Below, one piece after another: positions 48,193 to 53,612 of a DNA stretch of 64,000 bases. The notes below the pieces were generated by a model. That model was not told the origin of the DNA. It searched no databases and saw nothing but the letters and a program-made list of their open reading frames with translations. The position numbers were made by a program, and so were the translations under genes. The DNA lies in assembly GCA_964252035.1 (NCBI GenBank), contig OZ176200.1, one strand, 5' to 3'. This DNA comes from Podarcis erhardii (taxonomy: Eukaryota). Within the stretch, counting starts at the first letter, position 1. Every line of letters begins with the position of its first letter.

Positions 48193-49991
48193 GATTCTCA
48201 AAGTGGTTGGTGGCTGCTCTAGTTCCTTGCTGGGTGGCTAACCCGGTCCTCTGCAACGAAGAAGCTGTGTTGCTGCTAAGAATCTCACTTGAAGTGAAAT
48301 CCAGGAGGTCAAACAGCAAATGCTTCCCTATGTAGAGAACACATTCAGAATAGAGCTATGTTTAATTCATGCTGCAAATGGGCTCAGTTGCACAAGAAAG
48401 GAGCCGAAGAAGCAAACCAGGGGTGGAACGGATGTAGCTTGGCACATGCATCAGTGCAACCAGCTTTTGTCCAGAAAAATTGCGACAAGCAAGGATTAGT
48501 TCTGCCCACATGGGACCACCTGGAATTGGCAGAGTCCTGGAGTGAACATTATATGTATTTGCAGCTATTTTTGTACTGTAGCGAGGAATATAAAATCCCT
48601 CCTTCAAAAGGAGACTGCAAGATCTCAAGCTGCCTGCTACTCTCTGCATCAATTTACTTGGGTGGGGAATCTGTAGTCTGCCAGATGTTTCTGAACACCT
48701 TTTGGGCCCTAGTCTGCATAGTCAGTCTCCAGGGTTGATAGAAGTTGTGGGTCAACAGGAGGACCACAGCTTAGATGTTTTCAAACAGATGCCGCAGGAT
48801 AGTGGCATGCTGTTAAACCCTATCTCCCTCTATCTTTAAATCCTGCAACAGTACAAATTTAGAGGAAGGAAGAGCAAACAAGTCGTCATCCAGAGTTTCC
48901 TCCACACCCCATAGTCTCTCAATAGAGTGAAATCATGTTGTAGGTTTTCCTACAGTAGCTACATCTGCTGTTGGACAATGGATGTTCAGAACATGTTCTA
49001 CCTCCTCTGGTGGAGGCAGTGTGCCTCTGAATGCCAGCTGCAGGGAATCACAAGTGGGAAGAGCCCCATCACACTCAGGACCTGTGTATGGGCTTCCTAT
49101 AGTGTGAGAACAGGGTGGGCCTTTGGCCTCACCCAGCAAGGCTCTTAGGCTATGTTTTAGCTAGGTGTACACAAGAATGTTGAGCTGGCCCTAAGCCTGT
49201 ATTGCTGTCTGGCCTATTTGATGCACTCAATTCAGGCAGCAGGGGTGTGAATCTGGTTTCGTAGTCTGTAGTATAGACAGATTTCACATGGTTGATGTAG
49301 CTGTTTGGAGCTCTTTGTGCTTTTCATGTTCTTAGACTGCTTTGCTGAGGCACTGAGGTAACTTGCATTAAGATAAGTCCTCCATCCTATATTCTTTTTT
49401 ATTATTATTCTGCTCATCAGCAAAATAGTAATAAGCTCCCAGAGCGCATCTTGCGGATCCATAAAAACAAGACAATCCCTGCCCTCGGGCTTACATTCTA
49501 AAAGACACAACACAAAATGAAAACTGATCAGGAGGGAAAAGGAAATAAGCAAGCTCAAGTACCCGTTCTTCTAAGAGCCAGCTAGGATAGATACACTTTA
49601 CTGGAAGGAGCCAAGAGTTGCTGGTGTCTGAACTGTGCTGGTGGAGTGGCCCTGTATCCCTTCCCTCCTCTGCTACAGAAAATTATCTGATCTCTGTACT
49701 TTGGTTACATGCCCCAGCTTCCTCTACTTGAGCTTACAGGGAATCTGATCCAGCTGTTAATAATTCAGCCTGCTCCTCCTCGTGGCAAGAGAAGCAGGAT
49801 TCTCATTAGAGGTTTTCATTATCAAGCTGTTTTTGGAAAGGGGACGTGCATTCCAGCAGTGGAAGTAATTTTTCTTTTTTCCTTTCAAAACACTGCTATA
49901 ATTCTCAGAACAGACCTCAGCAGTCAATAAAAAAACTATTATGAGAAAGGTTTGCATCTATTCTCGGTTTACACAAGACATGATAAATACT

Positions 49992-52900
49992 TTAAGTGTT
50001 TCTTGGGCCTTTTTGCAAATTTCCCCTACTTCGAGATCAATTTGAGATCAGACACAGAAAAAAGAATCATTTGGGACGCAAGTAAAGCCGTGATGCGTGG
50101 CTTCCTAATACAACAGAATTCAATAAAGAGGAAAAAGCAGAATGAGAAGAAAGAGAAAATTTGGAATCTAATAAAAGAAGGGGAGAAGAAATTGAGATCT
50201 AAGCCTAAATCCCAGGAGATATTAAGAGAAATAAAATTCTATCAAACACAATATATGGAATTGACGAACCAGGAAATAGAATGGAAAATTAAACAAATGA
50301 GACAAAAGACTTTTGAATCTGCAGATAAATGTGGGAAGCTACTGTCTTGGCAACTGAAAAAGAGACAAAAATTGAACACAGTGACATCACTCGAAGTAGA
50401 TGGGAAGTCTATTAATAAACCAAATGAGATAAGTAATTGTTTTCAAAGTTTCTTTAAGAAATTATACAAACAAGGGCCAAAAAATGAACAGGAGATAGAA
50501 GAATTTATTGGAAAATACGGACTATCAAAAATCTCTGAAAACAACAGAAGGAGTTTAAACGAGAAAATTACAGACCAAGAAATAGAGAGTGCCATCCAGG
50601 ATATGAAGCTGGGAAAATCACCAGGACCAGATGGATTAACTGCGAGATATTATAAAGTATTGAAGGATTGGTTAATACAACCATTGAAAGAAGTCTGCAA
50701 CCAAATTTTGGAGGGGAAAAAGGCTCCCGAATCGTGGAAGGAAGCATTCATCTCACTTATACCAAAGACAGAAACTGAGAAACATCAAGTCAAGAATTAC
50801 CGCCCTATATCACTTTTGAACGTGGATTATAAAATTTTTGCAGACATTCTAGCAAAAAGATTCAAAAAAGTGCTGTTAGAGGAGATTCACAGGGACCAAA
50901 CAGGCTTTCTACCAGGCAGGCATTTGTCAGACAATGTGAGGAATATTATAGATATTCTAGAACTTTTGGAAACTGACATAAATAGAAAAGCTGTTTTGAT
51001 TTTTGTGGATGCAGAGAAAGCCTTTGACAATATTTGTTGGAGTTTTATGAAGAGGAATCTCCAAGGAATGGGGGTAGGCAAGAACTTTGAAAATGGTATA
51101 AGTGCAATTTATTCTGAGCAAAAGGCCAAACTTATTGTAAATGGTATGGTTATGGATGAAATTCCAATAGAGAAAGGGACACGACAGGGATGCCCAATTT
51201 CCCCTCTATTGTTTATATCGGTACTGGAGGTTTTCCTTAACATGATTAGAAGAGACCAGCTGGTTAAAGGTATACAGGTCGGAACTAAACATTATAAGCT
51301 AAGAGCATTTGCAGATGACCTAGTTTTGACACTACAACAGCCAGAAACTAGCACAAAAAGAGTTTTGGAACTTATTGAAATATTTGGTCAGGTAGCAGGT
51401 TTTAAATTGAATAAACACAAGACAAAGGTGTTGGAAAAAAATCTCACGGTGGGGGAAAAAGATAGTTTTCAAAGAGAAACGGGTTTGGAAATTACTAAAA
51501 AGGTAAAATATCTGGGGGTGAACTTAACATCTAAGAATGTGAATCTATTTAAAGATAATTATGAGAAATGCTGGGCTGAAGTGAAGAAAGATTTCGATAT
51601 ATGGTCAAGATTGAGACTTTCCTTGTTAGGCCGAATTGCTGTAATTAAGATGAATGTATTGCCGAGATTGTTGTTTTTGTTCCAGACATTGCAAATTTTA
51701 GATAAGATGGACTGTTTCAAGAAGTGGCAGAAAGATATATCTAAATTTGTCTGGCAGGGCAAAAAACCCAGAATTAAATTCAAGATTTTGACTGATGCAA
51801 AGGATAGAGGGGGCTTTGCCCTGCCGGACTTAAAACTTTATTATGAAGCAGCAGCTTTTTGCTGGCTGAAACCATGGCTACTTCTTGAGAATACAGATAT
51901 TCTGGACTTGGAAGGTTATGATAATAGTTTTGGTTGGCATGCATATTTATGGTATGACAAGGTAAAGGTACACAGAAATTTTAAAAATCATATTATTAGG
52001 AAAGCATTGTATAATGTATGGAATCGATATAAAGATTTGTTTGAAAGTAAAACCCCCAGGTGGCTGTCACCAATGGAAGCTAAGGCGGTAAAAAGATTGA
52101 ACATGGATACAGACTGGCCAAAATATTGTGAAATTATAGAATATGATGGTGAAAAGTTGAAACTACAGAGTTTTGAGAAATTGAAACCTAAAGTCCGAGA
52201 CTGGTTACATTATTACCAGATTAATGAAACTTTTAAGCAGGACAGAAAACTAGGATTTCAGAAGGAGAGGTCAAAGTTAGAAACAGAATTGCTAGAACCC
52301 AATACTAAGAATTTGTCTAGAATGTATAATCTGCTGCTAAAATGGAACACACAAGATGAAACGGTTAAATCAGCCATGATTAAGTGGGCACAAGATATTG
52401 GTCATGATATTATGTTTGCTGACTGGGAGCAGTTATGGACCACAGGTATTAAATTTACGGCATGTAGTGCCCTGAAAGAGAACATAATGAAAATGATCTA
52501 TAGGTGGTACATGACCCCAGTCAAGCTTGCAAAGATATATCATTTGCCCAATAACAATTGCTGGAAGTGTAATGAATGTGAAGGAACTTTTTATCACCTT
52601 TGGTGGACCTGCCCAAAGATTAAGGCCTACTGGGAAATGATCTATAATGAAATTAAGAAAATCCTTAAGTGGACATTTGTAAAGAAACCGGAGGCTTTTC
52701 TCTTGGGCATGGTCGGCCAATTGGTACCAAAGAAAGATAGGACCTTTTTTATGTACGCAACAACAGCAGCAAGAATCCTTTTGGCGAAGTATTGGAAGAC
52801 TAAAGAATTACCTACTCTGGAAGAATGGCAGACCAAGGTGACTGAATTTATGGGACTGGCAGAGATGACCGGCAGAATCCGTGACCAGAAGAAAGAGACA

Positions 52901-53184
52901 GTGGAGGAGGACTGGAAAAAATTTAAAATCTATCTTAAAAATTGTTGTAAAATTTCGGAATGTTAAGATGTCAGGGGATTGGACACTAAGAATTACAGCT
53001 ATAAATCGAAATTTATAAAGCAGAAACTCTTTTTAAAGAGAATTAAATATAAAAATGGGATGAAGAATTGCTAAAAATTTTGAAATTTGGATGCAGTGAA
53101 GGGGAGGTTTGGGGAAGTCGCATTATGTTTGTTTTGTTTTTTCTTTATGTTGTAAAATCAATAAAAATTATTATAAAAAAAAAA
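49992..53184 (+). mobile_element. Young 5'-truncated L1-clade LINE (3.2 kb) with an inverted 5' tip
   Basis: Perfect 17-bp TSD aagacatgataaatact (49975-91 and 53185-201), AATAAA at 53160, A-tail, and an open ORF2 with RT. Confidence 0.96.
50027..52966 (+). CDS. L1 ORF2p fragment (RT and C-terminal CCHC; endonuclease missing)
   Basis: Motifs KSPGPDG, YRPISLLNVDYK, DAEKAFD, GTRQGCPISPLLF, FADD, YLGV and CWKC...HLWWTC. No stops; first ATG at 50093. Confidence 0.9.
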   Translation, partial: YFEINLRSDTEKRIIWDASKAVMRGFLIQQNSIKRKKQNEKKEKIWNLIKEGEKKLRSKPKSQEILREIKFYQTQYMELTNQEIEWKIKQMRQKTFESADKCGKLLSWQLKKRQKLNTVTSLEVDGKSINKPNEISNCFQSFFKKLYKQGPKNEQEIEEFIGKYGLSKISENNRRSLNEKITDQEIESAIQDMKLGKSPGPDGLTARYYKVLKDWLIQPLKEVCNQILEGKKAPESWKEAFISLIPKTETEKHQVKNYRPISLLNVDYKIFADILAKRFKKVLLEEIHRDQTGFLPGRHLSDNVRNIIDILELLETDINRKAVLIFVDAEKAFDNICWSFMKRNLQGMGVGKNFENGISAIYSEQKAKLIVNGMVMDEIPIEKGTRQGCPISPLLFISVLEVFLNMIRRDQLVKGIQVGTKHYKLRAFADDLVLTLQQPETSTKRVLELIEIFGQVAGFKLNKHKTKVLEKNLTVGEKDSFQRETGLEITKKVKYLGVNLTSKNVNLFKDNYEKCWAEVKKDFDIWSRLRLSLLGRIAVIKMNVLPRLLFLFQTLQILDKMDCFKKWQKDISKFVWQGKKPRIKFKILTDAKDRGGFALPDLKLYYEAAAFCWLKPWLLLENTDILDLEGYDNSFGWHAYLWYDKVKVHRNFKNHIIRKALYNVWNRYKDLFESKTPRWLSPMEAKAVKRLNMDTDWPKYCEIIEYDGEKLKLQSFEKLKPKVRDWLHYYQINETFKQDRKLGFQKERSKLETELLEPNTKNLSRMYNLLLKWNTQDETVKSAMIKWAQDIGHDIMFADWEQLWTTGIKFTACSALKENIMKMIYRWYMTPVKLAKIYHLPNNNCWKCNECEGTFYHLWWTCPKIKAYWEMIYNEIKKILKWTFVKKPEAFLLGMVGQLVPKKDRTFFMYATTAARILLAKYWKTKELPTLEEWQTKVTEFMGLAEMTGRIRDQKKETVEEDWKKFKIYLKNCCKISEC

Positions 53185-53612
53185 AAGACATGATAAATAC
53201 TGTAATGCCACCCCTACTTCATTGAACCATGAGACATTTCAGGGGAGTTGTTCTTAACTGGGCCGGGTCTCATTTTGGGATGAGGGCACTGGAGGCATGC
53301 CATTGTTTTGTCATAATACTTGTTCTTAATTGAAAATATACATGTTGAGCATAGGTGAAGATACAGTGTTAAACCACTCCAACAAATACCGAAGTTCACT
53401 GTACCTCAGCTGTGTTTGTGGTGGGCGAAACTGCCCCTTCTGACACCGATGTTGCTGCTGCTTACCTGGCTGGGGCTGGCTGGGTGGGACAATGGTGAGG
53501 TCAGAGCTATGGGTTGACCACCAGCCAACCTGATGTTCCCAGTGGTGCAACTGTGTGGCCCCAAACGTCTTGTTCCCTCCCCATCCAGGTAAGCAACAGT
53601 GACACCCCTGAC

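What the first reader, a model, noticed from the sequence alone, without database searches (positions are those of the whole stretch)
49992..50026. Inverted 5' tip of the L1: a twin-priming signature in a reptile
Seen: the 35 bp after the TSD read FKCFLGLFANFP in the ORF frame, which does not look like L1. Their reverse complement reads GGG GAA ATT TGC AAA AAG GCC CAA GAA ACA CTT AA(A G) = GEICKKAQETLK. This fits directly ahead of YFEINLRSDTEKRIIWDASKAVMRG, where 50027 resumes in sense, with about one codon lost. The TSD 3' end (..ct) supplies a 2-nt microhomology at the inversion point. Established: 5' inversion with a small deletion and microhomology is the twin-priming product described for mammalian L1. 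I cannot establish here how often it is documented in squamates. That the peptide is contiguous in the source element is inferred from the typical post-endonuclease helix pattern.
Basis: partly seen in the sequence, partly recalled or inferred. Interest (0 to 1): 0.7.

Follow-up and report, generated by a model that had tools for sequence, protein, structure and literature searches.

The report
Lizard L1 insertion with flipped tip
A young, dead 3.2-kb copy of an L1 jumping gene in a wall-lizard (Podarcis) genome has its first 33-35 bases back to front inside one 17-base target duplication; this is the "twin priming" footprint well known from human L1, so it is a clean but ordinary example in a little-studied host.

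Summary
Window 49992-53184 is one L1 insertion, 3193 bp long. It sits between perfect 17-bp target-site duplications at 49975-49991 and 53185-53201. Contigs from three related organisms' runs show the empty site with a single copy of the 17-mer.

From 50026/27 the element is sense ORF2: 979 intact codons starting just after the endonuclease domain, then a 3' UTR, AATAAA and a 10-12 nt A tail. The first 33-35 bp (49992-50024/26) are the reverse complement of the ORF2 stretch that lies directly upstream in longer copies. Four results show this:
- 45 of 50 relatives carry the peptide in sense, one residue (D) before YFEINLR.
- Two P. lilfordi L1 copies align colinearly at the DNA level.
- Antisense L1 contigs run through the tip into upstream ORF2.
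- Only 1-4 nt are missing between the two pieces.

The target-side end of the tip is the L1 position next to the sense start, and the duplication's last two bases (CT) match L1. This geometry is what twin priming predicts.

What is unusual is the very short inverted cDNA; human medians are about 290-750 bp. I found no squamate L1 report among the held papers. This scan has already noted similar structures elsewhere in this genome. Interest is low to moderate.

The parts
49975..49991 (.). Left target-site duplication, 17 bp (AAGACATGATAAATACT). Its 3' end (..ACT) is the presumed top-strand primer.
   Evidence: Exact repeat found twice in the window. It is a single copy in the empty-site contigs of X18 and X19, where 17 letters fit both sides.
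49992..50024 (-). Inverted L1 ORF2 piece, 33 bp certain. It is antisense to the codons for (E)EICKKAQ(K/E)TLK that precede D-YFEINLR in longer copies.
   Evidence: Translation. Position in relatives. Reverse-strand DNA alignment to L001 and L002 directly upstream of the sense start. X15 contigs that match the + strand up to 50024 then continue with letters whose reverse complement encodes RMNDTLFGD(E), the ORF2 sequence further upstream (table 7).
50025..50026 (.). Internal junction. 50025 C fits neither piece: it may be untemplated, a later substitution, or a variant of the source. 50026 C fits both pieces: the G of GAG in antisense, or the C of GAC in sense.
   Evidence: Antisense contigs stop matching at 50024, while a near-identical sense contig (X20 record 24, 1 mismatch in 239) starts matching at 50026. 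Comparison with L001 and L002.
50027..52966 (+). Sense L1 ORF2 from residue ~267 of ~1244 to the stop. It has 979 intact codons, an RT domain and a C-terminal Cys-rich motif. The endonuclease domain, ORF1 and 5' UTR are absent.
   Evidence: ORF list. Pfam RVT_1 at 2.6e-37. 91% identity to P0001 residues 267-1244.
52967..53174 (+). L1 3' UTR, with AATAAA at 53160-53165.
   Evidence: Read directly. Aligns to the 3' ends of L001 and L002.
53175..53184 (+). A tail, 10 nt. Two further A's are shared with the TSD.
   Evidence: Read directly.
53185..53201 (.). Right target-site duplication, 17 bp.

Best explanation
This is a single, recent L1 retrotransposition event of the twin-priming type.

Inferred sequence of events:
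1. The bottom strand was nicked at the left edge of the 17-bp target, and that end primed reverse transcription at the A tail. This cDNA ran 3.15 kb, to just after the endonuclease-coding part of ORF2.
2. The top strand was nicked 17 bp downstream. Its free 3' end (..ATACT) paired through its last two bases with AG in the ORF2 sequence CTTAAAGAC of the same RNA.
3. That end primed a second, antisense cDNA, which stopped after only about 33-35 nt.
4. The first cDNA stopped 1-4 nt short of this second priming site.
5. The two cDNA ends were joined with zero or one base of homology and perhaps one untemplated base (50025). The gaps were filled, which duplicated the 17-bp target.

What is shown: the single insertion, its exact borders, the inverted orientation and source position of the tip, the near-contiguity of the two pieces, and the 2-nt match.

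What is inferred: the order of events, the use of one RNA molecule, and which polymerase made the short cDNA.

The copy lacks a promoter, ORF1 and the endonuclease, so it was dead on arrival.
For: One insertion:
- Perfect 17-bp TSDs.
- Empty-site contigs in three other organisms' runs that skip exactly 49975/49992 to 53184/53201 (table 5).

The tip is inverted L1 from the adjacent upstream position:
- Peptide GEICKKAQETLK against EEI[CY]KKAQKTLK-D-YFEINLR in longer relatives. 45 of 50 relatives place it one residue before the anchor.
- Reverse-strand DNA alignment next to the sense start in L001 and L002.
- Tip identity to L002 (81%) equals that of the rest of the element (82.5%).
- Antisense L1 contigs continue from 50024 into upstream ORF2 (table 7).

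Geometry:
- The TSD-side end of the tip maps to L002 5794 and the sense part starts at L002 5799. That leaves a 4-nt gap (AGAT/AGAC). AG of it equals the reverse complement of the TSD's last two bases, and C may be 50026.
- Human data report that the end of the non-inverted cDNA and the start of the inverted cDNA usually lie close together, and that 18-22% of L1 insertions are of this type (PMC12016303).
- The model as described in PMC2837659 predicts exactly this architecture.
Against: - The inverted cDNA is far shorter (33-35 nt) than typical human cases, whose medians are 292 and 751 bp.
- The microhomology at the priming site is only 2 nt, about 1 in 16 by chance.
- The internal junction has at most 1 nt of homology, with one unexplained base.
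- The first-strand nick site reads TCTT/GT (or GTC/TT) rather than the human TTTT/A consensus.
- A 4-nt direct repeat (TACT, 49988-49991 and 50027-50030) flanks the tip. The model does not predict this.
- Sequence alone cannot separate twin priming from a hairpin route.
Confidence: 0.8

Rival explanations
1. Self-primed (snap-back) hairpin. The first cDNA ran about 38 nt further, to the position of the tip's inner end. Its 3' end folded back and primed second-strand synthesis at the position where the sense part now starts. The ~35-nt loop was then opened at its 5' base, so the loop ended up on the top strand as an inverted tip.
For: - It gives the same strand architecture and the same near-contiguity of the two pieces seen.
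- It would explain naturally why the inverted piece is so short.
- Another L1 in this genome with a 44-nt flipped tip was noted by the scan (s1-268867, unchecked).
- Hairpin self-priming by reverse transcriptases is established knowledge from classical cDNA cloning. I have not tested it here.
Against: - It needs more steps: hairpin opening at one exact place, then joining of a 3' overhang to a 5' overhang of the same strand. Even so, the 17-bp TSD is perfect on both sides.
- Only 1 nt (50026) could pair the folded-back end with its priming site.
- The 2-nt match of the TSD end to L1 is not predicted by this route.
Confidence: 0.12
2. Ordinary 5'-truncated insertion that began about 38 nt further upstream, followed later by a 35-bp micro-inversion (with a 1-4 nt loss) at its very tip.
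For: Micro-inversions of this size exist in vertebrate genomes (PMC8755829, listed, not read). The sequence alone does not date the inversion relative to the insertion.
Against: - One inversion breakpoint would have to fall exactly on the TSD/L1 boundary (49991|49992) in a very young element. The element has an intact 979-codon ORF and perfect TSDs, is absent from three related organisms' runs, and is probably still polymorphic.
- No inverted repeats flank the segment.
Confidence: 0.05
3. The 35 bp are unrelated filler DNA, or the normal sense sequence of this L1 family, and the peptide resemblance is chance.
For: None found. The tip happens to be open in the ORF frame (FKCFLGLFANFP).
Against: - tblastn homology to full-length ORF2 starts only at 50027.
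- All relatives have the segment in the opposite orientation at the adjacent position.
- DNA alignments and contig continuation agree.
Confidence: 0.01

Closest known systems
Twin-priming (5'-inverted) L1 insertions of human and other mammals (Ostertag and Kazazian 2001, cited from PMC2837659 and PMC12016303)
   Same: - One TSD pair.
- A sense 3' part with an A tail.
- An antisense 5' part from the adjacent upstream L1 region.
- A small loss at the breakpoint.
- The inverted piece's TSD-side end next to the sense start in L1 coordinates.
- Short complementarity between the target's 3' end and L1.
   Different: - The host is a lacertid lizard, and the L1 family is only about 42-45% identical in ORF2 to Anolis L1 families.
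- The inverted cDNA is 33-35 nt, against medians of about 290-750 bp in humans.
- The nick site is not TTTT/A.
Twin-priming variants with one extremely short cDNA (Meyer et al. 2010, Mob DNA, PMC2837659)
   Same: One of the two cDNAs is tens of bases long. Standard pipelines that require two recognisable L1 fragments therefore miss the event.
   Different: There the short product is the A-tail-primed cDNA, giving a 5' poly(T). Here the short product is the internally primed, inverted cDNA.
Simple 5'-truncated L1 insertions with microhomology at the 5' junction (established knowledge, not tested here)
   Same: Truncation inside ORF2, a perfect TSD and an A tail. The TSD end (TACT) even shares 4 nt with the first sense bases (TACT at 50027-50030), as such junctions often do.
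   Different: Thirty-five bases of antisense L1 lie between the TSD and the sense start.
Head-to-head L1/LINE chimeras with snRNA or 7SK, and 5'-inverted BovB/SINE copies, noted by this scan in the same genome (s1-232448, s1-225620, s1-220687, s1-217716; unchecked notes)
   Same: Two oppositely oriented cDNAs inside one TSD in the same lizard genome. Several have short (44-61 nt) inverted pieces.
   Different: Those involve a second RNA species or non-L1 machinery. Here both pieces come from adjacent parts of one L1 sequence.

Membership tests
Twin-priming (5'-inverted) L1 insertion | A single insertion bounded by one pair of target-site duplications | tested here: met
   The 17-bp repeat occurs exactly twice. 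Empty-site contigs in X18, X19 and X20 skip the whole 3193 bp plus one TSD copy.
Twin-priming (5'-inverted) L1 insertion | A 3' segment in sense orientation ending in an A tail next to the TSD | tested here: met
   50027-53174 is sense ORF2 plus 3' UTR, and the A run at 53175-53184 abuts the TSD.
Twin-priming (5'-inverted) L1 insertion | A 5' segment that is sequence of the same element in the opposite orientation | tested here: met
   peptide; DNA; antisense contigs continue into upstream ORF2.
Twin-priming (5'-inverted) L1 insertion | The two segments are adjacent in the source element, with only a small deletion or duplication. The TSD-side end of the inverted piece is the coordinate next to the sense start. 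| tested here: met
   The tip's TSD-side end maps to L002 5794 and the sense start to L002 5799. The gap is 4 nt at most and 1 nt if both ambiguous matches are counted.
Twin-priming (5'-inverted) L1 insertion | Complementarity between the top-strand 3' end at the target and the L1 RNA at the internal priming site | tested here: inconclusive
   2 nt match (TSD ..CT against L1 AG) and the third base mismatches. Chance is about 1 in 16.
Twin-priming (5'-inverted) L1 insertion | L1 endonuclease-type first-strand nick site (human consensus TTTT/A) | tested here: inconclusive
   The bottom strand reads TCTT/GT, or GTC/TT if the two shared A's belong to the tail. It is pyrimidine-rich before the nick but not the human consensus. 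I do not know the preference of lizard L1 endonuclease.
Twin-priming (5'-inverted) L1 insertion | Two reverse-transcription starts on one RNA molecule during integration | not testable with these tools
   This needs a retrotransposition assay or a statistical survey of many junctions.
L1-clade LINE | ORF2 with an APE-type endonuclease and a reverse transcriptase, an ORF1 of the L1 type in the family, an A tail, and long variable TSDs | tested here: met
   RVT_1 in the window copy. Relatives of 1244-1246 aa carry PF03372 plus PF00078, and one Anolis relative carries PF02994. L002's upstream ORF is Exo_endo_phos. ORF1 of this particular family was not examined.

The most novel reading that the evidence does not exclude
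Ultra-short inverted tips (about 30-60 nt) may be a recurrent class of lizard L1 integration product that has gone uncounted. They could arise because top-strand-primed synthesis by this L1 is very poorly processive. Alternatively they could arise by a different route: self-primed hairpin loops that are opened and kept. If so, the true rate of double-primed integration in squamates, and perhaps in mammals, where pipelines ignore pieces under about 50 bp, would be underestimated.
Probability: 0.12. Interest if true: 0.45.

Novelty: new member of a known kind. Interest (0 to 1): 0.25.

Why it matters
The finding shows, with exact breakpoints and an empty-site control, that an L1 family of a lacertid lizard leaves the same 5'-inversion footprint as mammalian L1. 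That fits the second-strand steps of L1 integration being shared across amniote L1 lineages.

In practice, a 33-35 nt flipped tip is invisible to repeat annotation. It makes a spurious in-frame extension of the ORF, and events of this kind will be under-counted.

The locus is also a very young L1 insertion that is probably still segregating. It could serve as a marker, and as a pointer to a recently active L1 subfamily in Podarcis.

It does not reveal a new mechanism.

Tried and rejected
- **Fetching DNA for the closest full-length relatives.** This failed. They are UniRef-only P. muralis proteins with no gene position on record. I used two more distant P. lilfordi copies reached through P0024 and P0162, plus the Logan contigs.
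- **Other L1 copies in the window for an internal comparison.** None were found with 14 diverse L1 ORF2 queries, so no local rate could be estimated.
No tool here searches a lizard assembly.
- **The original twin-priming paper.** It is not held, so I cite it through PMC2837659 and PMC12016303.
- **Two literature searches with min_terms** returned only off-topic papers, and one call failed on a short term.
- **Readings considered and rejected:** foldback copying of the cDNA's own end (a palindromic or P-nucleotide-like addition) would duplicate the adjacent downstream sequence in inverted form, whereas the tip is unique upstream sequence absent from the sense part; and chance resemblance or filler DNA.
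- **Hypothetical un-inverted cDNA.** I did not fold one, because that would need letters placed at the junction.

Full report
**What is at the site.**
- The window reads ...AAGACATGATAAATACT | 35 nt | TACTTCGAGATC... at 49975-50038.
- The 17-mer recurs once, at 53185-53201, directly after a run of A's. No second occurrence is expected by chance.
- Between the repeats lie 3193 bp.
- From 50027 an open frame of 979 codons runs to a stop at 52964-52966. It has a reverse-transcriptase domain (RVT_1, 2.6e-37) and a Cys-rich C-terminus of the L1 kind.
- It is followed by a ~208-nt 3' UTR, with AATAAA at 53160-53165 and a 10-12 nt A tail.

**Family and host.**
- The best protein matches are UniRef "reverse transcriptase domain-containing" proteins of Podarcis muralis (91% for P0001). 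P. lilfordi follows, then Anolis L1-like ORF2 proteins at 42-46%.
- Full-length relatives are 1244-1246 aa, with an endonuclease domain (PF03372) ahead of the RT.
- The window copy aligns to residues 267-1244 of P0001 and to nothing upstream.
- It is therefore a 5'-truncated L1 of a lacertid lizard, lacking the 5' UTR, ORF1 and the endonuclease.

**One insertion, with exact borders.** I laid Logan contigs of four runs on 49500-53500.
- In two other organisms (X18, X19) a single contig joins 49974 to 53185. It skips 3210 letters, with 17 letters fitting either side.
- In a third (X20) a contig joins 49991 to 53209, with a few changed letters.
- Flank divergence is about 1-3%, so these are close relatives with an empty site holding one copy of the 17-mer.
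- This fixes the insertion as 49992-53184. It also shows that the 35 nt under study arrived with the L1, not with the flank.

**The tip is inverted L1 from the adjacent upstream position.**
- The reverse complement of 49991-50026 reads GEICKKAQETLK.
- Longer relatives read ...RDEEIYKKAQKTLK-D-YFEINLR..., with variants FCKKAL, VCKKAQ and IVKKAQ.
- Among 50 relatives that hold the anchor and at least 40 residues before it, the best ungapped match of the 12-mer lies exactly one residue before YFEINLR in 45, with 7-9 of 12 identities.
- Shuffled versions of the peptide reached 8 identities anywhere in any of these proteins only once in 300 trials.
- I fetched two P. lilfordi L1 copies that extend further 5' (L001, L002). 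The sense part aligns from window 50027 to L001 4106 and L002 5799, at 82.5% over 3.1 kb.
- The tip aligns on the opposite strand to L001 4096-4070 and L002 5794-5763, immediately upstream and at the same identity.
- In the source-like run X15, three contigs match the window's + strand up to 50024 and then continue with 30 letters. The reverse complement of those letters encodes RMNDTLFGD(E), the ORF2 residues that precede EEICKK in the relatives (table 7). These are closer L1 copies lying antisense, and they run straight through the tip.
- A near-identical sense contig in X20 (1 mismatch in 239) starts matching at 50026 and has 222 more letters upstream that do not match the window (table 8).

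**Breakpoints.**
- In L1 coordinates the source reads ...GAG GAA ATT TGC ... ACA CTT AAA GAC TAC TTC GAG... The letters come from the window's two pieces, from the X15 loose end, and from L001 and L002, which have GAT for the D codon.
- The inverted piece covers the stretch from GAAATT, plus the preceding G, to CTTAA.
- The next two L1 bases (AG) equal the reverse complement of the TSD's last two bases (CT).
- The sense piece starts at TAC, or at the C before it.
- At the internal junction, 50025 (C) fits neither piece and 50026 (C) fits both.

**Mechanism.**
- The end of the inverted piece that touches the TSD is the L1 position adjacent to the start of the sense piece. This is what is expected if the top-strand 3' end (..ACT) primed on the L1 RNA just upstream of where the first cDNA stopped. 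That is the twin-priming model as drawn in PMC2837659.
- In humans the end of the non-inverted cDNA and the start of the inverted cDNA are likewise usually close. There, 18-22% of L1 insertions are of this type (PMC12016303).
- The unusual feature here is length. The inverted cDNA is 33-35 nt, against human medians of 292 bp (somatic) and 751 bp (germline).
- Copying of the short second cDNA and of the TSD by the first strand, after an end-to-end template jump, would explain the single orphan base at 50025. This step is inferred.
- I put twin priming at about 0.8.

**Rivals.**
- Hairpin route (about 0.12). The first cDNA runs ~38 nt further, folds back, primes its own second strand at the sense start, and the loop is opened at its 5' base. 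This gives the same product and would suit a very short tip. It needs more steps, gives no reason for the 2-nt match at the TSD, and sits poorly with perfectly kept TSDs.
- Later micro-inversion (about 0.05). One breakpoint would have to fall exactly on the TSD/L1 border of a very young element.
- Foldback copying of the cDNA's own end is excluded, because the tip is not a copy of the adjacent sense sequence.
- Chance or filler DNA is excluded by the tests above.

**Age.**
- The 979-codon frame is intact and the TSDs are perfect.
- Three related organisms' runs lack the insertion.
- A copy differing at 1 of 239 positions exists in another organism's run.
- In X15, contig 1 matches through the left TSD and four more letters with one mismatch, then has 9 unmatched letters. 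Contig 8 begins exactly at 53185.
- This is the pattern expected for the empty allele read through by k=31 unitigs that overlap by 30 letters (17 + 13) and break at a branch. It suggests that the individual carries both the empty and the filled allele. I did not see the 9 letters themselves, so this is an inference.

**Literature and earlier notes.**
- 106 held papers contain "twin priming". The 40 listed concern human or other mammalian L1, apart from one on an in-vitro LINE integration system and one on retroelement-based transgene insertion.
- The four that also mention lizards or Anolis do not describe an L1 5' inversion in a squamate. The Anolis LINE polymorphism paper cites the twin-priming paper only for truncation.
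- This is absence from the held library, not proof of absence.
- The scan's own notes hold 12 "twin priming" findings, of which 8 were shown, all in this genome. They include another L1 with a 44-nt flipped tip in a 17-bp TSD (s1-268867) and L1/7SK chimeras. I did not test them. They suggest the pattern is recurrent here, and they lower the surprise.

**Verdict.** This is a new example of a known kind in a little-studied host, with an unusually short inverted piece. Interest is 0.25.

Noticed in passing
window 49988-49991 and 50027-50030: The same four bases (TACT) end the left TSD and begin the sense L1 part, so a 4-nt direct repeat flanks the inverted tip. In a simple 5'-truncated insertion this would be the classic junction microhomology. 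Twin priming does not predict it. It may be chance (about 1 in 256 for one register).
   Followed up: partly
window 49975-50004 and 53185-53214 (run X15 contigs, table 8): In the source-like run, the upstream-flank contig ends 13 letters past the TSD, with one mismatch and 9 unmatched letters. The downstream contig starts exactly at the TSD. That is a 30-letter (k-1) overlap typical of an empty-allele path meeting a branch, so the sequenced individual is probably heterozygous for this L1 insertion.
   Followed up: partly
window 50026-50264 (run X20, record 24): A 461-nt contig from another organism's run differs at 1 of 239 positions and carries 222 more letters upstream. This suggests that a nearly identical, longer L1 copy exists there and that this subfamily was active very recently across close relatives.
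   Followed up: no
window 49952-52966: The mechanical ORF (TTG start, 1004 aa) begins in the flank and reads in frame through the TSD and the inverted tip (FKCFLGLFANFP) into ORF2. The extension is an accident of the inversion, not coding sequence, and could mislead gene callers.
   Followed up: yes
window 49500-49633: This bin has roughly 4-10 times the contig depth of the next flank bins (49634-49901) in all four runs (table 2), so another repeated element probably lies at or before 49633.
   Followed up: no
L001 4007-4942 and 5001-6860; L002 5001-5840: In the P. lilfordi assembly, single L1 ORF2 copies are annotated as separate hypothetical genes. One is named exodeoxyribonuclease III. Some L1 fragments are thus being annotated as host proteins in Podarcis gene sets.
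   Followed up: no
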